Assembly (NCBI GenBank): GCA_904063045.1
Contig: CAJFCJ010000019.1
Location: 2,371,700-2,435,699, forward strand
DNA: 64,000 nt
Direction: 5' to 3'
Source: Dimorphilus gyrociliatus
Taxonomy: Eukaryota; Animalia; Annelida
The translations under genes and the position numbers were made by a program. Numbering within the stretch: the stretch's first letter is position 1; each line of letters starts with the position of its first letter. Below, one piece after another: positions 38,466 through 54,202 of this stretch. Under the pieces are notes generated by a model. The model had not been told where the DNA came from, did no database searches, and was given only the letters and a program-made list of their open reading frames with translations.

Positions 38466-38982
38466 TTCTGAAAATAAAAATTCTTTTATGAGTGATTTTT
38501 CAAAATAAAAAGAGTCAAAACAAGATAACATGTGAAGTTTAACAGTATTTACTCAAAAGAATTGACACGTGTTTCTAACTATTATAAATAGATATTTATT
38601 TTTTCTCTGAAGAAATAAGTAACTTAAAAAGTTGAGATACAGTTGGTATATACGTTCACTAAATGCAACATCACTGAGCGATAAACGATAAAATAATAAT
38701 TTCACAAAAAATTTCAAATGAATTAAGCAATTAAATTTGACAAAAATATGGTAAGAGTAAATGAAATCTTACTAGCAGCTAGATATCGAAATGTTTTATT
38801 GAAAAAGACTGTAGATTATGTTATTGAGCCAAGTATATACTCGATGAGAGCCGCTCTGTAAACGGAAACGGAAATTATTTTGAGGATGTGGTCGCCTGAT
38901 CCGTGGCTGGTTTGACATATTATCGCGACAATTTAGTCGGCTAGAAATTTTCTAAATAAAATTGTTCGAAAAAACTGCTGGT

Positions 38983-40737
38983 ATGAGTACTCTAGATATG
39001 CATGATCTTAAAAAATTGGCGAGGGAAGAACTCCAACTAAAGTTCAGTGATACTTATCCCAAAATTTTAGTTGTCGATAATGCTCTCCTTCGCCCGTTAG
39101 ATAAACTATTTGGTAATAGTTTTATTCGGGAAACTGCAAGATTGAAGAGGTTATATACCCTAGACTCCATGGAAGATAAGCTATTTGATGCACAGCACAT
39201 AACTTTTATGATTAGACCGACCTGCGACAAGGTTAAAAGAATTATTAATCACGTTCAAGGCCTTATTGCCAAAGGAAAGAATCACATTTATACACTTGTA
39301 TGTGTACCTAGAAGATTACACGTATGTATGACAATTTTGGAGGAGGAGGGACTACATGACGTCATAAAATTAGATGATTTTGCCATTGATTGCGTTCCAT
39401 TAGACACAGATTTGGTCTCCTTAGAGATTTCTGATTGCTTTTCATCATTATTTTTAGATAAAGATAAAAAATATCTATACGACGTCGCACATTCCTTGCA
39501 CACCTTGTATTGCTGCTTCGGAAAGTTTGTCAATTACTACACAGTTGGCGAAAATGCTCTTGCTGCCTATGAATTATTTGACAAGCTTCTAGTTTGTAAC
39601 GGTGATATATCGCATTCCCGAGAAGATGTATACCATGTACTTCTTGTAGATAGAAATGTCGATCTTATTTCGCCTTTATTATCTTCACAAGTTTATCCCG
39701 CACTAGCCGCCGATATCTTTGATATAAAATGCAGTCAAATTGAACTTTCGCAACAACAGGTTGTTAGCTTTGACAACACTGACCCATTTTATCAACAAAA
39801 ATTTAGAGATGCTTTATATCCAAAAGCACAAACAATACTTAAAGAATTATTAATTACCTTAAAAGATAAAAAGGATGAAAGTAAAACATTGAGAAACGTT
39901 GCGGATATGAAAAATTTCGTTTCAACGGAACTAAAAGGAGCGATGGATATGAAAAATTCGGTTGCCAAACATTTAAAAATATGCGAATTGATTAAATCAA
40001 AGAAATATGACCCTCTACAAAATAATATTGAATTTATTCAAACAATGGAGCAAAAGATGCTTTTGGGAATAGATTATAAAGAAACTGCAACGTTTGTTGA
40101 AGAATTTATCGTTCAACAATCCGATCCTAGTCATGCTTTACGCTTATTATCCTTATTAAATTTAACTCAAGATTGTATTCCTCGCTCTAAAATGGAAGAA
40201 TACTTTAAATATTTCTTACAAGCTTATGGTTTTCAATATTTAACTTGGTTGCACAATGCTAAAAAGGCATCATTCTTGGGAGATTCCGATCAAAGCTTTC
40301 AAACCAGACCTACTTTCAAGACTTTTTCCGGCAAAAAGTGTCCTCTTGTAAATAAAGCCGGCACTGCAGAGAGTAGTAATATTGAAGATAATTTCGCTCC
40401 AAATTACGTGTATGGCGGGTACTATACGCCTCTGGTAGCTCACTTAGTTGACAAACTAATACTGAATAGGCCTGAAACTAAACAGATATATGATGACTAC
40501 GGTAAAATGCTAAATGTTCCCGTAAAATTTTTTACTAAAGGGGAATCTGCTCGAGGTGGAAATCGAAAACCGATGTATACTAAAACGATACTCGTCTATT
40601 TCATTGGAGGCTGTACGAGAGCAGAGCTCTCAGCCCTAAGGACTTATGCAAGACCTTCTAAAAATTATAGACTCATTTTTGCAACAACCGAAATGCTTAA
40701 TAGCGTTTCATTAATAGATTCAGTAAAATGTACATAA
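38983..40737 (+). CDS. VPS33B: Sec1/Munc18 family vacuolar protein sorting 33B, single exon
   Basis: LKKLAREEL, LEEEGL, PLDTDLVSLE, LLVDRNVDL, YFIGGCTRAELSALR. First ATG in the ORF is at 38983. Confidence 0.85.
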   Translation: MSTLDMHDLKKLAREELQLKFSDTYPKILVVDNALLRPLDKLFGNSFIRETARLKRLYTLDSMEDKLFDAQHITFMIRPTCDKVKRIINHVQGLIAKGKNHIYTLVCVPRRLHVCMTILEEEGLHDVIKLDDFAIDCVPLDTDLVSLEISDCFSSLFLDKDKKYLYDVAHSLHTLYCCFGKFVNYYTVGENALAAYELFDKLLVCNGDISHSREDVYHVLLVDRNVDLISPLLSSQVYPALAADIFDIKCSQIELSQQQVVSFDNTDPFYQQKFRDALYPKAQTILKELLITLKDKKDESKTLRNVADMKNFVSTELKGAMDMKNSVAKHLKICELIKSKKYDPLQNNIEFIQTMEQKMLLGIDYKETATFVEEFIVQQSDPSHALRLLSLLNLTQDCIPRSKMEEYFKYFLQAYGFQYLTWLHNAKKASFLGDSDQSFQTRPTFKTFSGKKCPLVNKAGTAESSNIEDNFAPNYVYGGYYTPLVAHLVDKLILNRPETKQIYDDYGKMLNVPVKFFTKGESARGGNRKPMYTKTILVYFIGGCTRAELSALRTYARPSKNYRLIFATTEMLNSVSLIDSVKCT

Positions 40738-40840
40738 ACTAACTACTCAATTATCATTAATATTCCAGTAACTTTTTACATAATGCTTGCTTCTTTACAT
40801 TTTTGTTGATTTATATTTGTTAATTATCGAATTGAATTAA

Positions 40841-43800
40841 TTATTTATTCTTTATCATTTTATCAATATAATTTCGAAGTTCGCTAACTTCCTCTTGTAA
40901 AATAGCTTTTTCTGTCATTAATTGCGCTCTTTCGTCTTCTAGTTCCCTTTGAGTGTTTATAGTAAACTCTTTCACCTCTCTACGAAGTTTGTCCATTTCC
41001 AATTTTCTATAATAAATAATAAAATGTGAAAATAATGATTCAAATAAGAAAAAAGAGTTCTAAATATACAAACTTTTCATTTTTATTCAAGTCTGTATTG
41101 ATCTAAAGTAGACAAAATATGATTGTTAAATAATTAATTATAGATAAGTAGGAAATTTGAATACTCACGTTATACTTTGAATTTTCTATAGTATTTTCCA
41201 AGTCATCAATTTGATTCTTTAGTCTGAAAATTTCCTCTTGCTGAGATGATAATAAATCTTTCTCGTCTAATTGGAAGACTTGTTCTTTCGATCCAATATC
41301 AAAGTCTTCGTGTTTTTCCAAAATGGATACTTGCAATTGCCTGTAAGCAACTAATAACTGCTCGTATTTTTTAACTAATCCTTTTTTAATATTCTTCTCT
41401 TTGACAACAGCTTCGCATAGTTGTTCTTCTCTGGTTTTGTACGATTTTTTCAACTCTTGCAGCATTTCATCAACTTTTTTTCTTAAATTATTTATTTTAT
41501 CGGAAGAGAATTCGTAATTTCTCTGATTGTCAGCGATTATAGCAATATCGTTGATATATTTCGTTAAAGTTGACCTAAATTCCGAAGTCTTGTCTTTTAC
41601 TTTATGTTGTAACCTATTATATTCTTTTTCAATCTCGTCTTTTTCACTTTTTACATATATAAGTTCACTTTCCAGTTTGGCTAGTCGAAGCTGTTTGTCA
41701 TGGTCGGATTGTCTATATCTTTTTAAATCAGTCTGTAATTGCGCTCTGTTAAAATATAAATTATTAATTATCATTAAAAGTTTGTTAATATTGCTATGTT
41801 CTTCTATATTACATTCTTAATTCTAAGGAGTCTCCAGATTTTTCAAAATCTGTCTTTAATTTATCCATTTTCTCCCTAAATTCATTTTCGCGGAGAAAGT
41901 ACTGAAATCAAAATTGCAATATTATAAAAAGAACCCCTTGATCAATAATTGTCAATTATTTTTACATTATCTTCTAATTCTTGTCTAATTCTTCTATTAG
42001 GGATTTTTGCTTCATCATCAGTAACTAGATGGCGCCATCGTTCACCTTCCTCCTCATCAACTCGTTGTCCAAGTTGTTGTTGTAGATTTGCCTTCTCCTT
42101 GACTAGTCTGAGCAACTCTACGCTTAAATCTATCACTTTTCTTTTCTAATTAAGATAATTGTTCTATTAAAAATGACAAATAGGCATTAATAGGGAACTT
42201 CACCTCATTTTCAGCGGTCATTCTCATTTCGGCATAGGAAGCTCGAAGATCAGTATACTCATCTGAAAGATCTTTGTAGACTTTTTGAAGTTCTAGCAAT
42301 CTTTCTTCGGCATATTTGGCTTTTTGCTCCTCTTTTTGTTTATCAGATAGCACCCCATTCAACTTCTCTTCCATGTTCAAAATTTTATTCTTCAAATGAT
42401 ATTGAACTTCTTCGTATTCTTCCCTTAATTGATGATTTTTTAATTTTAAATCGACTAACGTCTGTGAAATTTGTAGACGGTCTTTCTGAGTCAATAGAAG
42501 TTGTTCTGAAACGTCTGCTTTACTGTTAGCTAGTGTTCCAACGTGGGTTTTTAAAGAGGTATGCTGATGTTGGAGTTTTTCCACGTGATCCCTTAGCTCT
42601 ATCTTTTAGCAAAAAACAATAATTATTAAGGGCCCTCTTTTACACATATACAGTATATATGATATATTAATATTATACATTTTCTGATTGTAGAGCCAAT
42701 AATTCGCTTTGTATATCTTTAGAAAATGGTGCATTTGCGCCAAATCCTGCAATATTCTGAAGATAAATCAATCTAGCCCTGTATTGGGTGATTAATTGCT
42801 AAAGGGGAAAACGAGAAGAAAGATTTAGAATACATTATTATTTATAAAGAGAAAAGCAAGTCATACCAGAGCTAAATTATCATTAACTAATGGAAAATTT
42901 TTAACTTGACTAAATTGGGCGCACATTCTTAAAATTGGATCAACGACAGAACTTTCCTTTTTCGGTTTTAAGCAAACAAGAACTGTTGTTTTACTGTTTC
43001 CTCCAATTTCTTCTTTAAGCATGGTAGTAAGTTTTGAATGACTATAGAATGTAATATAATAGTATATAGCGAGATACCCTGAGGAGATATATTAATATAT
43101 CCCGTACTTACTTATAAGGAATTACTCTATCAGCATGTGGTTGATTAGCAAGACTTGCTACCAGTTGTGATAGAGTGATTATGGATTTTGATAAGTTTTC
43201 GCCTTCTCTTTTAATTAGAACTGTGTCGTCTCGTAGTCTTTCTGCTCCTTGAGTTACACAAATGGTAAATCTACTACTATGACTTTGATTCTGATCTCTT
43301 AGTTTAACGTTAAGATCAAGATATATAACTATATTAGAAAATTGTTCAGATGACCCATAGTCAGTTTCCATTGCCGATCTTTTATTAAGACCCCGCCTAA
43401 ATAAGCCACATCCTTCAAGAACATTTGGCACAGTTCCCACTGTTCCATTTTGTACGAATGTGCCCTTTTCAGCTGATTCTTCAAATTGGCAGAATTCAAC
43501 TTTGGGTGTTACAGCCAACAGATCTCTGACATTTTCATTAAAAATTTCATACATTTGCATTTTTAATCTTCCTGGTGGATGACGTCTTTCATCCCCGTAA
43601 TATTCTTCATCTATTAACAGGATGTCAATTTGTAAGCTTTCGATTTACTGTATATAAATGACTATTTATAAGGGCGATTTACCTTCTCCAATCTTACTGA
43701 ATATATGATACAATATCTGAGAGAAAATGCCAGACGAACTACTATTATTTCCAACAACAGTAAATGCTTTCCCAGAATTGGATTCACCAGTAACAATTAA

Positions 43801-44078
43801 ACAGCAGTTGAATCCGCTTGCCCACAAGTCGACCAGGGGACGAGTAGTAAGGGAGAAAATGTCAGAGTTCGTCGTAGAAGTGGGAAATATTTCATTTATA
43901 CTACAATGAATAAAGTATTGTACTGAAGATCAAATAATAGATTTTATATCAACCTATGATATGGCGCACCAGGTCGATTGACTAATTGCTCAATGCTGCT
44001 TTGGAAGCTCTCGGATATATGAACAGCTCTTTCCCCATGTACTGATGGTCTTACCCTACCATAAACTTCAATATTCAT
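40841..44078 (-). CDS. CCDC78: Kinesin motor-like domain (degenerate) fused in frame to a CCDC78/DUF4472-like coiled coil
   Basis: Exons 44078-43954 (NIEVYGRVRP), 43900-43683 (GESNSGKAFT), 43610-43112 (YEIFNENVRDLL), 43041-42866 (SKLTTMLKEEIGGNSKT), 42798-42679, 42602-42204 (RLQISQTLVDLKL), then further exons to the stop at 40841 (FTINTQRELEDERAQL). Splice phases are compatible across the motor/coil junction. Confidence 0.75.
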
Positions 44079-44921
44079 ATTTGAAATGATTCAATAATTA
44101 AACATTAATATTTCTTTAACCAGCTGTTTTCGATGAGCGATATAATGTTAGTACCTATAAACAATGTTGCCAAGGAAGACTAATTTCAATATTTAGCTGA
44201 TCTATTTATGGCGGGAAATTGTGCTAAACTAGCGACATCTAACCAGAAAATCATGTACCGTAGTGCTTATTCTATTTTTGACCCACACAGCAAATCGTAG
44301 CTGCAGCCATACTTATTTTCGGAAACGGAAGTTGCTCAAATTTGTGAAACCAGAATATTCAGTATTTCAACATTTCATAAACCAATTCAATAATTGATCA
44401 TATAAATAAGACTCATTTTTTGGATTTCTCACTAAGTAATTAAGTTCGTGACATCAACAATAACAAAAACTTCTATATAGTATAACCTGAATTTGTAAAA
44501 AAAAAAATAAGGTTTGTATGTGGCAGCTTTATTTTATGTTTTTTTCAGAAAATGTATATTCCTTAATAGAAATATTTGGTGTAATATGTTTTTTATAAAT
44601 CTGTTTGTCTATTTCTCTAAATCAAGGTAAAATATATGACAACATTAGGCATTGTGGGAGTCTTAAATGTCCTTGAATATATTAATATTTTATTAAAACT
44701 ACCCACATAAATGGTTTCAGGGCTATACTTCAGTAATTGTAATTTATATCATTAGTATGATGCTTATATTAATAATAAATATTTTTATTCAATTATGCTT
44801 GTACAAAACGAACTAGTAACCGGACACTGTAAATGTTTTAGAGTATTTTCTGTACTTTTTATATAAAATGTTAGCAAACAAAATAAATAAAACTGGAAAC
44901 ATTATTTTCCATAGATAGACA

Positions 44922-50183: not shown

Positions 50184-51089
50184 AACTACTGGTGACGTTT
50201 TCGTTCGCCTGCGCAATATTATATTTGACGATGAAGCCTGTAAGAAAATTAATTAAAAGACGTGATTCGCATACGAACTAGAACATTTATAAATGAGATC
50301 CCAGTCTCGTTATTGTATATTATTTAGCTATAAACAACAACAACAAACGTAACGACTAATGTTTATCTTGTCAATAAATAGGATATTTCGGTGTCCAGAC
50401 GTCTTTATTTTATTTTTGCTCTTAAACTTTAAACATATAATCGCTTGCTATATAAACACTTGATAACACTCCCTACATTTTATAGTAATTTTTAATTGTA
50501 TAAATGGTTACTCTTGATATGTTCATGAACTGCCCTTTGGAATATAGGCCTAGTCTGCATTGAAGAATAAATTTTCCAAAACTTACCAGATTTTTCTATT
50601 TACTAAATAAAAATATGTTTGCTTTCCGAAGTGAAAGACTACAATTTATATCTTATTTTCTTCATTTAGCTTTTTATGTAATATTCATTTAATAATAAAT
50701 CAAATTAAATGTCTATAAGATATATTTTTTCATAAGATACAACGTTAGAACGAAAAAAAGATGCCGGTTGAATTAGATTCGAATTTGTAATTGATTATTT
50801 ACAGTGTCCTTGAAGAGCGCGTTTAATTTTAATTATAAAGATTACAAAGTAAGTTTGTAGTTTAAAAACTATGTTGGTGCGTCGGTGTCCAACTGCTTTT
50901 AAAGTTATGAATAATAATTCAAATGAATAAATATGAGGAAATTTTTTTCGTTATGATTAATCAGGAGAAGAAAGAAATTAAAAAAAAATTCTTGATCATT
51001 CTCGCGAGGTATTTGATGACGTATATAAAGTTTAGCAGACGTTTTTCTCATTGTACAGTTTACCTCCTTCTTGTTCAAAGTTCGTAAAT

Positions 51090-52076
51090 ATGGCCGCGAC
51101 CAGATGGGGAATTATTAGTGCAGGCAGAATTTCATCAGACTTTGCCACTTGCTTGACACATCTACCAGATAATGAACATATCGTAACAGCAGTAGCTGCC
51201 CGAAACCTTGACGATGCCAACGCATTTGCGAAAAGATTCAACATTCCAAAGACGTATGGAAGCTATGATGAGATAGCCGATGACAATAATATAGATGTAT
51301 ATTACATTGGAACAATACATCCAACTCATCATCCAATAGCATTGAATTTGATTAATAAGGGTAAAAATGTTTTATGCGAAAAACCCCTATGCATGAATGT
51401 GAAAGAAACAAAAGAATTGGTTGAAGCTGCAAGAAAAAACAAAGTCTTTCTAATGGAAGGTTTCTGGAGTAGATTTTTTCCGGTTTATGAAGAATTAAGA
51501 AGTGAACTGAAAGCAGGAAGCATAGGAACACCCGTTGTTTTAACTTGCACAGCTGGAATTAATGCTCCAAATGTGCCTCGTTTAAGAGAACGTGCTTTGG
51601 GTGGTAGTTCGCTTTTAGATTTAGGTTGTTACTTAATTCAATTGGCTTTGTTGGTTTTCGGGGAAAAGCCTATTAAAATTACAGCTTCTGGTCATCTTTT
51701 TGAGTCCGGTGTAGATTCTCTTGCAAGTTACACGTTATTATTCAAAAATGGTGGAGCTGCAAATCTTTTGTCCACTTGTACCGTAGAAATGAAAAACGTC
51801 GGAAGAATCTTTGGTACAAAAGGCTCTATTGAATTTCCTAAATTCCATGCCCCAACTGAAATAGAAACACCAAGTGGAAAAAAATCTTTTGATCTCCCGA
51901 ATATTAGTAAACCTATGAATTTTCCCAATTCCACAGGGTTTTGTTATGAGGCTCAAGCAGTAAGAGAAGCCCTTCTCCAAGGAAAAACTGAACATGAACT
52001 TATGCCTTTAAATGACACAATTTCTATTGCCGAAATAATGGAGGAAATTCTTGCACAAATAGGCGTTACGTACTAG
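51090..52076 (+). CDS. DHDH: Trans-1,2-dihydrobenzene-1,2-diol dehydrogenase / D-xylose dehydrogenase (Gfo/Idh/MocA), single exon
   Basis: RWGIISAGRIS Rossmann motif, VLCEKP, FLMEGFWSRFFP, GGSSLLDLGCY. Confidence 0.9.
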   Translation: MAATRWGIISAGRISSDFATCLTHLPDNEHIVTAVAARNLDDANAFAKRFNIPKTYGSYDEIADDNNIDVYYIGTIHPTHHPIALNLINKGKNVLCEKPLCMNVKETKELVEAARKNKVFLMEGFWSRFFPVYEELRSELKAGSIGTPVVLTCTAGINAPNVPRLRERALGGSSLLDLGCYLIQLALLVFGEKPIKITASGHLFESGVDSLASYTLLFKNGGAANLLSTCTVEMKNVGRIFGTKGSIEFPKFHAPTEIETPSGKKSFDLPNISKPMNFPNSTGFCYEAQAVREALLQGKTEHELMPLNDTISIAEIMEEILAQIGVTY

Positions 52077-52210: not shown

Positions 52211-52243
52211 TTTCGCGCCGAAGACCAAGCGTTGCCGGGCAAC
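52211..52243 (+). promoter_or_regulatory. E2F-type site (TTTCGCGCC) plus RFX X-box (GTTGCCGGGCAAC) just upstream of TEX47
   Basis: Near-perfect palindromic X-box at 52231-52243, 15 bp before the ATG of a cilia/flagella-associated gene. Confidence 0.6.
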
Positions 52244-52258
52244 AATGCAAACTAAAAC

Positions 52259-54202
52259 ATGGCGAACGACGATGATTCTGTTCTATTTGATCGAACGTCG
52301 CTTTTGGACGTTATTGAGGACAAGAACAGGACTCTCAATAAGGTAAAATGACAAGGCCTAAAAATTATTAAACGTTTTATGCATAGATCAAGAATAATTC
52401 AAAGTAAATATTTGCACAATTTTCCTTTCTCGAGCGATTGTTTGCGTTTATGCTCATATGAAAGGCTTGAGCTAGCGGTTAGTCGTTCAGTTTCTAGCCA
52501 AAATGAATGAAGGCGAAACAACAACATTAGAAACTATGAGACGTTATGTCTATGAAAATTCAGATACTCCTGAACCACATCAACATTCAAATTTATTTGA
52601 ATTAAAGTTGGATAGAGTCTACGTAGCTGAATCTGGATATGTAAATAATCGAACGAATGACTGCTTTCTTCTTTAATTTGTACCATATCATAATGATATT
52701 AAGCCTACCTTCTACTATTTTTTTCAGAAAAACCTATTACATAGGGCCGTTATAGTTTGTAAAACAAAAGGAAAGAATAACTTCGAAGAAATCGGAAGTA
52801 AGATAATTAATTAAATAAAAAGTTTGTGTTTTTGTTTGTAAAATAAAAGCTTTTTACCTTATTAGGATACTATGAAAAATTTTTCGTTACTGCTGCAAAT
52901 CAACTTCAAACCGAAACTGCACATGGATTGCTATTAGTTTACCCTGAGTACTGTGTGCACGTGGTAGAGGTTGGTAAACTAAATAGGTTTGCTTAGAATT
53001 CATTTGATAGTAAAGAGAATATTGCTTTTAAAATAAGGCTTCTATGGAAATGATTTTGGAATTGTTAAGAGATATAACAAACACTACCCCAGAAAATGAA
53101 TACAGAACGAATATAGCTAAATTATTGTCTATATCTCGGGATATATCCTTTATTTTTAATAGCATTTAGAATAATTCGAATATTACATATTGAAATTTAA
53201 CCTTAACTCTTACATTACATACCCTATCCATTATATCAATCATGGTCTTATCGGAGTATAGATATTGTTGCTCAGAAGATTGACGAATACGAACCTTCAG
53301 AGACAGAAGATAAGCTAGTTATTGATATGTTAACCCAACTTTTAAAATTGGGTAAGCATTTAAAGCAAACCAAGGTAAGAAAATTTAAGCATGGTTAAAT
53401 TATTTAGTTGAATAGTATTAACAACATAAACAATTTTTAAACGACGATGTTTAACATTAATTAACTCAAGTTTGAAACGTTAATTTAATATTCTAAAAAG
53501 AAAAGCGTTTTCAGGAAAGGACGAATAGCGATGGAGGTTCGGCCAAATCGAACCAAATGCGTATGAGTGTTGTAAGTGACCAAGAAAATATTTAGTTTTA
53601 GAAATCCAAGCTTATTTTATGAAAACAAAATTTTTGTTTTGGCTTATTTTTTGTTTCCAATCATTTTTTCGAAGAAGATTATTTATGTGATTTATGTAGC
53701 TTTGTTAGATTTTTAAATATTCTTTATGTATGATCCTCATACTGTATATTGCATGAATCGATTTGTTTACTTTTTTTTGTCGATTTCCTATTTTTGCATA
53801 TTCAATTTTGTACCATTTTGATAAAAAAATTTTGTGGTAAACTTAAAAACTATTTTCATTAAATTATCATCTGCAGGCCCTTGGTGGAGCACCAGTATCT
53901 GATTCCCTGCATGAAAGAGTACCCGAACTTTTACCTAGACAAGGTAAAATTTTGAATATTAAATACAAATTCTATTTTTAGTTTTCTGTTAAATTGCAGA
54001 GGTGTTAGGTTATCTGCTGGATAATCAAGTTGATTGTATTATGACGCCTAGAGACCTTATTGAAAAGTACGATACACCATTTGATGTGGCTTTGGCAGGA
54101 GGTATGAGCGAGTTGATTCTAATCAAAAGAAGCCTATTTTCAAATTTTTTCATTGCAGATATGGTGTGGCCCTTAAACGTGCGGCTATTTCCGTATAGTT
54201 AG
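52259..54202 (+). CDS. TEX47: Testis-expressed protein 47-like (BLUF-like fold)
   Basis: Exons 52259-52342, 52728-52797 (KNLLHRAVIVCK), 52866-52969 (GLLLVYPEYCVHVVE), 53038-53142, 53219-53374, 53877-53943, 54000-54101, 54159-54202 (DMVWP). Confidence 0.8.
53143..53218 (+). other. U12-type (minor spliceosome) AT-AC intron
   Basis: 5' site ATATCCTTT, branch CCTTAAC at 53201-53207, 3' AC at 53217-53218. Removal restores the frame: SRD|IPYPLYQSW. Confidence 0.85.

What the first reader, a model, noticed from the sequence alone, without database searches (positions are those of the whole stretch)
40841..44078. Pseudo-kinesin motor fused to CCDC78: candidate unrecognised centriole/cilia scaffold
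A full kinesin fold (RVRP start, EIFNENVRDLL, PY..SKLT..L...GGNSKT, terminal KNFPLVN) splices in phase through 42798-42679 into a CCDC78/DUF4472-like coil with no stop. All nucleotide motifs are broken: P-loop GESNSGKA (vs GxTGSGKT, Mg-binding Thr lost; 43765-43788), switch I GSSEQFSN (vs NxxSSRSH) and switch II VTQGAE (vs DLAGSE). The microtubule-binding loop-12/helix-5 region is conserved. The inference is an ATP-independent microtubule tether on a protein that in vertebrates, without a motor domain, acts in deuterosome centriole amplification. An X-box-like motif upstream fits a multiciliated-cell role.
Basis: partly seen in the sequence, partly recalled or inferred. Interest (0 to 1): 0.82.

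Follow-up and report, generated by a model that had tools for sequence, protein, structure and literature searches.

The report
Full-length CCDC78 with dead kinesin head
This is one expressed 11-exon gene encoding the ancestral long form of the cilia protein CCDC78, a kinesin-like head with broken ATPase motifs joined to the CCDC78 coiled coil; public databases show this layout across animals, so the gene is real and interesting but not a new kind of protein.

Summary
An 11-exon minus-strand gene (44078-40841, 858 aa, all GT-AG introns of 53-76 nt) encodes a kinesin motor domain followed in frame by the DUF4472/CCDC78 coiled coil. A public transcript contig removes all ten introns at exactly the predicted junctions. 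The Walker-A Thr, switch I and the switch II Asp are all lost, while the microtubule-binding helix alpha4, L12/alpha5 and the neck linker are kept.

The claim that this is unrecognised does not hold. The same layout is routine in RefSeq proteins named CCDC78 or CCDC78-like. It occurs in molluscs, brachiopods, annelids, echinoderms, hemichordates, amphioxus, tunicates, cnidarians, a choanoflagellate and many vertebrates (sharks, lungfish, caecilians, salamanders, alligator). It has also been noted in print for a Tetrahymena ciliary-tip kinesin.

All 65 full-length relatives lack switch I, so the dead motor is a family trait. This gene is a fast-evolving member, probably from an annelid, with two further losses.

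[quoted passage not shown] The likeliest role is therefore a non-motile, dimeric microtubule binder at cilia tips, not primarily a deuterosome scaffold. The X-box-like motif is no more than chance would give.

I rate it a new member of a known kind, of moderate interest.

The parts
40841..44078 (-). Whole coding region of the gene: 11 exons, 858 aa, from ATG at 44078 to TAA at 40843-40841.
   Evidence: Splice model. All 10 junctions are present in a transcript contig. The product is colinear with 65 full-length relatives.
43954..44078 (-). Exon 1: start codon, beta1 and the N4 motif RVRP (44057-44046).
   Evidence: The N-terminus MNIEVYGRVRPS matches the family consensus MNI.V..R.RPS.
43683..43900 (-). 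Exon 2: kinesin P-loop region. The degenerate Walker A GESNSGKA lies at 43788-43765.
   Evidence: Pfam Kinesin 49.8 bits. Aligned to GATGAGKT of KIF18A.
43112..43610 (-). Exon 3: core of the motor. It holds switch I GSSEQFSN (43356-43333), switch II VTQGAE (43257-43240) and helix alpha4 (43197-43147).
   Evidence: Pfam Kinesin 60.9 bits. Alignment to the 2owm and KIF4 structures.
42867..43041 (-). Exon 4: L12/alpha5 (SKLTTMLKEEIGGNSKT), alpha6 and the neck linker VKNFPLVND (42905-42879).
   Evidence: Pfam Kinesin 23.8 bits, profile positions 282-310. Family conservation.
42679..42798 (-). Exon 5: neck coil (LITQYRARLIYLQ) and a linker. This is the in-phase bridge from the motor to the coiled coil.
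   Evidence: LxTQYRARI is conserved across the family.
42204..42602 (-). Exon 6: the DUF4472 (CCDC78) domain. The Pfam hit covers 42485-42207.
   Evidence: PF14739 at 51.6 bits against a cut-off of 26.6. A search of 1.84 billion proteins returns only CCDC78-family proteins at the top.
40841..42145 (-). Exons 7-11: 42145-41966, 41901-41813, 41745-41169, 41102-41074 (a 29-nt mini-exon) and 41006-40841. They encode the C-terminal coiled coil of CCDC78.
   Evidence: This region is 33-38% identical to the same region of Lingula and mollusc CCDC78-like proteins.
44166..44180 (-). X-box-like sequence GTCTTCCTTGGCAAC, 88 nt upstream of the ATG. Only the right half-site is canonical.
   Evidence: the relaxed pattern is seen 5 times against 4.3 expected. 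It does not match the strict consensus.

Best explanation
The locus is the orthologue, in a fast-evolving lophotrochozoan (probably an annelid), of the ancestral long form of CCDC78. The protein has an N-terminal kinesin-fold head, a conserved neck linker and neck coil, then the DUF4472 domain and a long C-terminal coiled coil.

The head is a pseudo-motor. Switch I is missing in every family member examined. In this protein the Walker-A Ser/Thr (GKA) and the switch II Asp (VTQGAE) are lost as well. ATP hydrolysis and stepping are therefore very unlikely. The tubulin-facing elements (alpha4, L12/alpha5) are retained.

Inferred mechanism: the coiled coil dimerises the protein, and the two dead heads bind the microtubule lattice or plus ends statically, in a rigor-like manner that does not depend on nucleotide turnover. 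[quoted passage not shown]

What is shown: gene structure, expression of the spliced form, domain identity, orthology, and the motif states. What is inferred: lack of ATPase activity, static microtubule binding, and ciliary-tip localisation.
For: Gene and transcript: the 11-exon model is, and one transcript contig carries all 10 joints at the predicted positions.

Domains: Kinesin and DUF4472 both score above Pfam cut-offs.

Orthology: the model aligns over residues 1-855 of 858 with CCDC78-like proteins at 32-40% identity, with E values down to 1e-177. The family tree follows the species tree. The window sits inside Lophotrochozoa (support 100/100), next to the annelid Paralvinella (88/96).

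Architecture: 16 of 27 first hits, and dozens of named RefSeq entries, carry PF00225+PF14739.

Dead motor: alignments to solved kinesins are. None of the 65 relatives has SSRSH.

Maintained, not decaying: the motor is as conserved as the coil (34-39% against 33-38% identity). L12/alpha5 (RVINYxDSKLTxLLxxxLGGNCKT) and the neck (VKNFPxxND) are among the best conserved stretches.

Function by homology: Tetrahymena I7LVY1, a kinesin with a CCDC78 domain, is a candidate ciliary-tip cap protein and is depleted in FAP256/CEP104 knock-outs (PMC10522465). Xenopus, mouse and human CCDC78 mark the extreme distal tip of motile cilia. [quoted passage not shown]
Against: There is no biochemical or localisation data for this protein or for any metazoan long form. 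Most family members keep GxxxxGK[ST] and RxRP, so nucleotide binding, and conceivably some nucleotide-dependent switching, may persist in the family. Here Lys86 and RVRP are kept, so binding without Mg cannot be excluded. Vertebrate CCDC78 also localises to deuterosomes, and in muscle to the sarcoplasmic reticulum, so the tip role need not be the only one. The transcript contig is 9.7 kb and runs into neighbouring genes. It proves the splice joints but not the ends of a single mRNA. The run's library type is not on record. The long terminal branch (1.44 against a median of 0.4) could reflect relaxed constraint in this lineage.
Confidence: 0.7

Rival explanations
1. The protein is chiefly a deuterosome or centriole-amplification scaffold of multiciliated cells, and the dead motor tethers that scaffold to cytoplasmic microtubules.
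For: Vertebrate CCDC78 marks deuterosomes, and its knock-down lowers centriole number (Klos Dehring 2013, as cited in PMC10522465 and PMC12796433). The coil of this protein is orthologous to that of vertebrate CCDC78.
Against: The long form exists in a choanoflagellate and a ciliate relative, which do not make deuterosomes. The only localisation reported for a motor-bearing homologue is the ciliary tip. The X-box-like motif offered in support is at chance level. This role does not exclude the tip role.
Confidence: 0.15
2. The head is still a working, slow or atypical ATPase motor, comparable to KIF7. It would move to or track plus ends at the ciliary tip.
For: The P-loop Lys and the RVRP motif are kept. 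The neck linker and neck coil are strongly conserved. Most family members keep GxxxxGK[ST].
Against: Switch I SSRSH is entirely replaced (GSSEQFSN). The Walker-A Thr is Ala and the switch II Asp is Val. By established kinesin enzymology, these residues coordinate Mg and the gamma-phosphate and close the switch I-II salt bridge.
Confidence: 0.08
3. The motor part is a decaying relic with no function of its own, on its way to the loss already seen in frogs, birds, mammals and ray-finned fishes.
For: There is extra motif loss and a long branch in this lineage. Several vertebrate groups are annotated only with the form that lacks the motor.
Against: The reading frame is open across four motor exons. 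Identity to relatives in the motor equals or exceeds that in the coil. The microtubule-binding and neck elements are conserved. The layout has persisted since before animals arose.
Confidence: 0.05
4. The fusion is an artefact: two adjacent genes, a kinesin and CCDC78, wrongly joined.
For: The transcript contig is longer than the gene and also covers its neighbours, so contig continuity alone does not prove one mRNA.
Against: The motor-to-coil links are canonical spliced introns of 68 and 76 nt, in phase, with no stop and no room for a terminator or promoter. In addition, 65 relatives from many phyla have the same colinear protein.
Confidence: 0.02

Closest known systems
Invertebrate and early-branching vertebrate 'coiled-coil domain-containing protein 78(-like)' proteins of about 900 aa (RefSeq/UniProt). 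Examples: Lingula anatina XP_013398549, Crassostrea, Ostrea, Mytilus, Branchiostoma XP_035676411, Chiloscyllium XP_072416067, Nematostella XP_048584307.
   Same: They share the architecture (Kinesin PF00225 + DUF4472 PF14739 + C-terminal coil) and a similar length. They align end to end with the window protein. Switch I is missing in them too, and L12/alpha5 and the neck are conserved.
   Different: Most keep GK[ST] in the P-loop and D/E-LPG-x-E-K in switch II. The window protein has GKA and VTQGAE and sits on a much longer branch. It is also about 40-60 aa shorter at the C-terminus.
Tetrahymena thermophila I7LVY1 (kinesin with a CCDC78 domain, candidate ciliary-tip cap-complex component).
   Same: It has a kinesin head plus CCDC78-type coiled coil. 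[quoted passage not shown]
   Different: I could not retrieve its sequence with the tools, so the state of its catalytic motifs is unknown to me. It is 1066 aa, and its orthology is only asserted in the papers.
Vertebrate short CCDC78 (Xenopus, mouse, human; about 440-570 aa).
   Same: Its DUF4472 domain and C-terminal coil are orthologous to those of the window protein. It binds and bundles microtubules, sits at the cilia tip and at deuterosomes, and partners with CCDC33 (PMC12796433).
   Different: It has no kinesin head. Microtubule binding must therefore reside in the coil or in partners.
Immotile or catalytically impaired kinesin-fold proteins: KIF26A/B, KIF7/Costal2, NOD, Vik1/Cik1 (from my own knowledge, not tested here).
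   Same: In these proteins a kinesin fold serves as a static or slowly cycling microtubule binder. KIF7 also acts at the cilium tip.
   Different: They belong to different kinesin families and have different tails. The CCDC78 head matches KIF4, CENP-E, KIF14 and KIF18A about equally well (E about 1e-34 to 1e-30 for the shark head), so it belongs to no named family.

Membership tests
CCDC78 family (DUF4472, PF14739) | DUF4472 domain scoring above Pfam's gathering threshold. | tested here: met
   Exon 6 scores 51.6 bits against a cut-off of 26.6, E 1.6e-13. All other coiled-coil families fall below their thresholds.
CCDC78 family (DUF4472, PF14739) | Colinear, full-length similarity to named CCDC78 proteins, and placement inside their tree. 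| tested here: met
   Residues 1-855 of 858 align at 32-40% identity, E down to 1e-177. The protein sits inside the lophotrochozoan clade of a family tree that follows the species tree.
CCDC78 family (DUF4472, PF14739) | [quoted passage not shown] | not testable with these tools
   This is known only for Xenopus, mouse, human and Tetrahymena homologues.
Kinesin superfamily (PF00225 fold) | Kinesin motor-domain profile match. | tested here: met
   Exons 2, 3 and 4 score 49.8, 60.9 and 23.8 bits and cover profile positions 46-310 of 327. There are matches to solved kinesin structures.
Catalytically competent kinesin motor | Walker A GxxxxGK[ST]. | tested here: not met
   The sequence is GESNSGKA: the Lys is kept and the Ser/Thr is replaced by Ala. 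It aligns to GATGAGKT of KIF18A.
Catalytically competent kinesin motor | Switch I NxxSSRSH. | tested here: not met
   GSSEQFSN aligns to NDTSSRSH of 2owm. The motif is absent in all 65 relatives.
Catalytically competent kinesin motor | Switch II DxxGxE. | tested here: not met
   VTQGAE aligns to DLAGSE. Gly and Glu are kept and Asp is lost.
Catalytically competent kinesin motor | Microtubule-binding alpha4-L12-alpha5 and the neck linker. | tested here: met
   NLSKSIITLSQLVASLA, IPYNHSKLTTMLKEEIGGNSKT and VKNFPLVND are conserved with the family and with canonical kinesins.
RFX (X-box) regulated ciliary gene | Consensus X-box GTNRCC(N0-3)RGYAAC close to the start of the gene. | tested here: inconclusive
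   GTCTTCCTTGGCAAC at 44180-44166 fails the strict consensus. The relaxed pattern occurs 5 times against 4.3 expected.

The most novel reading that the evidence does not exclude
The kinesin-CCDC78 proteins would form an ancient clade of pseudokinesins specific to motile cilia, predating animals and not described in the literature. Its switch I was lost before choanoflagellates and animals diverged, yet its P-loop, neck and tubulin-binding face stayed under selection. These proteins would bind nucleotide without hydrolysing it and act as static caps or bundlers of ciliary-tip microtubules. The head-less CCDC78 studied in frog, mouse and human would then be a derived, truncated form. The window gene would be a natural further-dead variant (GKA, VTQGAE), useful for asking whether nucleotide binding matters at all.
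Probability: 0.45. Interest if true: 0.55.

Novelty: new member of a known kind. Interest (0 to 1): 0.38.

Why it matters
CCDC78 has just been shown to organise the extreme distal tip of motile cilia and to bundle microtubules (PMC12796433). The papers I could search treat it as a pure coiled-coil protein and call the kinesin domain absent from vertebrate Ccdc78. The comparative picture assembled here points to a different ancestral state. In animals generally, and in sharks, lungfish, caecilians, salamanders and alligator, the protein carries a kinesin-fold head whose hydrolytic machinery is gone while its microtubule face is conserved.

That gives a concrete, testable explanation of how the ancestral protein binds tip microtubules. 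It also raises the question of what replaced the head in frogs, birds and mammals. The individual locus adds one more orthologue, with a somewhat more degenerate nucleotide pocket. It does not reveal a new kind of system.

Tried and rejected
Folding. I could not fold or search the whole spliced protein with the structure and word-search tools, because a spliced product has no reference and long sequences may not be typed. I therefore worked exon by exon and through full-length relatives. No AlphaFold model was made, and folding a single 165-aa exon was judged uninformative.

Sequencing runs. Only one run holds the locus and its library type is not on record. It behaves as a transcript assembly, but it gives no strand, no transcript ends and no expression level.

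X-box. The strict consensus is not met, and the relaxed match is at chance frequency. I rejected it as evidence.

Literature. 'DUF4472' occurs in no held paper. 'pseudokinesin' occurs in one unrelated paper. The follow-up Tetrahymena tip-structure preprint does not mention this kinesin, and PMC12258958 is not held.

Kinesin classification. I tried to place the head in the Wickstead classification (cilia-restricted Kinesin-16/17). The supplementary tables use other identifiers, and Kinesin-17 members score like canonical motors, so no assignment was possible. PDB best hits (KIF4, CENP-E, KIF14, KIF18A) do not single out a family.

Earlier scan notes. The notes on this genome contain nothing on this gene.

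Tetrahymena I7LVY1. Its sequence was not among the listed hits, so its motif states remain unchecked.
Full report
**1. What is in the sequence**

The window is AT-rich (32% G+C) and eukaryotic, with very short introns. On the minus strand between 44078 and 40841 I built an explicit splice model.

- The model has eleven exons: 44078-43954, 43900-43683, 43610-43112, 43041-42867, 42798-42679, 42602-42204, 42145-41966, 41901-41813, 41745-41169, 41102-41074 and 41006-40841.
- Every intron is GT-AG and 53-76 nt long, and all exon phases are compatible.
- The product is 858 aa and ends at a TAA.

**2. Is it one gene?**

Only one public run holds this DNA. Laying its contigs on the locus shows a single contig from which all ten predicted introns are removed at exactly the predicted positions. 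The skipped ends read CT..AC on the plus strand, which is GT..AG on the gene's strand.

This includes the two joints that link the last kinesin exon to exon 5 and exon 5 to the DUF4472 exon. The motor and the CCDC78 coil are therefore connected by ordinary cis-splicing.

Two caveats apply. The run's library type is not on record. The contig is 9.7 kb and continues into neighbouring genes, so it proves the joints but not the transcript ends.

Independent support comes from relatives. The model aligns from residue 1 to 855 with full-length proteins of many phyla.

**3. What the domains are**

- Pfam finds Kinesin (PF00225) on exons 2, 3 and 4, jointly covering profile positions 46-310 of 327.
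- Pfam finds DUF4472 (PF14739), the CCDC78 domain, on exon 6 at 51.6 bits against a cut-off of 26.6. Every other coiled-coil family is below its threshold.
- A search of 1.84 billion representative proteins with exon 6 alone gave 45 hits. At least a dozen are 840-970 aa and carry the match at residues ~370-515, the same position as here (380-512).
- Pfam on 27 of these hits gave DUF4472 in 26 and Kinesin in 16.

**4. The motor is catalytically broken but structurally maintained**

HMMER alignments to solved kinesins give the following correspondences:

| Window motif | Aligns with | Source |
|---|---|---|
| GESNSGKA | P-loop GATGAGKT of KIF18A | |
| GSSEQFSN | switch I NDTSSRSH | |
| VTQGAE | switch II DLAGSE | |

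From established kinesin enzymology (my knowledge):
- The Walker-A Thr and the switch I serines coordinate Mg and the gamma-phosphate.
- The switch I Arg pairs with the switch II Glu.
- The switch II Asp holds Mg through water.

Losing all of these makes hydrolysis very unlikely. By contrast, these elements are kept:
- RVRP
- the P-loop Lys
- helix alpha4 (NLSKSIITLSQLVASLA)
- L12/alpha5 (IPYNHSKLTTMLKEEIGGNSKT)
- the neck linker (VKNFPLVND)
- the neck coil (LITQYRARLIYLQ)

The motor region is as similar to relatives as the coil is: 34-39% against 33-38% identity with Lingula, oyster, chiton, acorn worm and shark proteins. That argues for a maintained pseudo-motor rather than a decaying remnant.

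**5. The dead motor is a family trait**

I extracted the motifs from 65 full-length relatives.

- Switch I: none has SSRSH. The family consensus there is D[FYH]GPAxxxxx.
- P-loop: most members keep GE[ST]xSGK[ST]. GKA occurs in two others and GKL in two.
- Switch II: usually [DERK]LPGxEK.

The window protein is thus at the degenerate end of a family that is already non-canonical. The choanoflagellate Salpingoeca kvevrii has the same layout and also lacks switch I, so the condition predates animals.

The shark head matches KIF4, CENP-E, KIF14 and KIF18A about equally well. The head belongs to no named kinesin family, which explains database names such as 'CENPE' or 'Kif16B-like'.

**6. Distribution and orthology**

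A profile search with eleven long forms lists Kinesin+DUF4472 proteins, mostly named CCDC78 or CCDC78-like by RefSeq.

- Groups with the long form: bivalves, gastropods, a chiton, Lingula, annelids, hemichordates, echinoderms, amphioxus, tunicates and corals.
- Vertebrates with the long form: sharks and rays, lungfish, coelacanth, caecilians, salamanders and alligator.
- Groups listed only with DUF4472-only forms of about 560 aa: frogs, turtles, birds, lizards and ray-finned fishes.

A maximum-likelihood tree of 30 sequences follows the species tree. It places the window protein inside Lophotrochozoa (support 100/100), next to the annelid Paralvinella (88/96). Its terminal branch is 1.44 against a median of 0.4. 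The source is therefore probably a fast-evolving annelid with a compact genome. I did not identify the species.

**7. What is already known**

- Legal et al. 2023 (PMC10522465) list Tetrahymena I7LVY1 as a predicted kinesin that also contains a CCDC78 domain. It is depleted from cilia lacking FAP256/CEP104 and was proposed to bind central-pair microtubules in the tip cap.
- The 2025 Nature Communications paper (PMC12796433) covers vertebrate CCDC78:
  - Xenopus, mouse and human CCDC78 occupy the extreme distal tip of multiciliated-cell cilia.
  - CCDC78 is needed to localise CCDC33 there.
  - It bundles microtubules in vivo and in vitro.
  - It controls cilia length.
  - The paper notes that the Tetrahymena homologue has a kinesin domain 'absent from vertebrate Ccdc78'.
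- No held paper mentions DUF4472 or describes the animal long form or its broken motifs.

So the architecture is known in databases and, for a ciliate, in print. What seems not to have been written up is its generality in animals and the family-wide loss of switch I.

**8. Most likely mechanism**

A coiled-coil dimer presents two hydrolysis-dead kinesin heads. These heads bind microtubules statically through the conserved alpha4/L12/alpha5 face. The DUF4472 and C-terminal coil mediate self-association and partner binding (CCDC33/C2D1 in other species). [quoted passage not shown]

- Shown: the gene, the spliced transcript, the domains, the orthology and the motif states.
- Inferred: no ATPase activity, rigor-like binding and tip localisation.

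It is less likely to be ancestral, because unicellular relatives have the protein.

**9. The X-box**

GTCTTCCTTGGCAAC (44180-44166, minus strand) lies 88 nt upstream of the ATG. Only its right half-site is canonical. The relaxed pattern it satisfies occurs 5 times in the window against 4.3 expected from shuffles, and it fails the strict consensus. It neither supports nor contradicts a ciliary role.

**10. Verdict**

The gene is a new member of a known kind: the long, pseudo-kinesin form of CCDC78. It has some extra motif loss.

Interest is moderate. The locus itself is ordinary for its family. The family-level picture, a conserved dead kinesin head on a ciliary-tip protein retained in many vertebrates, is worth a specialist's attention and is directly testable.

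Noticed in passing
Relatives, not the window: P0005, P0087, P0092-P0094, P0097, P0103, P0112, P0114: Many vertebrates are annotated with a CCDC78 of about 850-950 aa that carries a kinesin domain: sharks and rays, lungfish, coelacanth, caecilians, salamanders and alligator isoform A. This is at odds with the published statement that the kinesin domain is absent from vertebrate Ccdc78. Alligator has both long and short isoforms, which hints at an alternative promoter rather than simple loss.
   Followed up: partly
window 52231-52243: A perfect palindromic X-box, GTTGCCCGGCAAC, is the only strict RFX-consensus match in the window (2 strand-hits against 0.27 expected). It lies between a Gfo/Idh/MocA-like dehydrogenase ORF (51051-52076, +) and an ORF starting at 52503 (+). 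The downstream gene may be a genuine RFX-regulated ciliary gene.
   Followed up: no
window 40700-44300 and beyond: The transcript contig that covers this gene is 9719 nt long. It continues about 5 kb upstream of 44300 and 1.8 kb downstream of 40700, so it runs into neighbouring genes on both sides. That suggests overlapping transcripts or UTRs in this compact genome, or chimeric assembly.
   Followed up: no
window 38962-40841: A 591-aa intron-less ORF with a Sec1/VPS33-like look (38962-40737, +; not verified by any search) converges on this gene. The two stop codons are only about 100 nt apart (40737 and 40841), so the 3' UTRs must overlap or be extremely short.
   Followed up: no
window 41074-41102: A 29-nt mini-exon (exon 10) is required to keep the frame. 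Both of its joints are confirmed by the transcript contig.
   Followed up: yes
P0032 (Salpingoeca kvevrii): A choanoflagellate has a 903-aa Kinesin+DUF4472 protein with an intact GAGKT P-loop but no switch I and a degenerate switch II (ALPSTEAL). The pseudo-motor state therefore predates Metazoa.
   Followed up: partly
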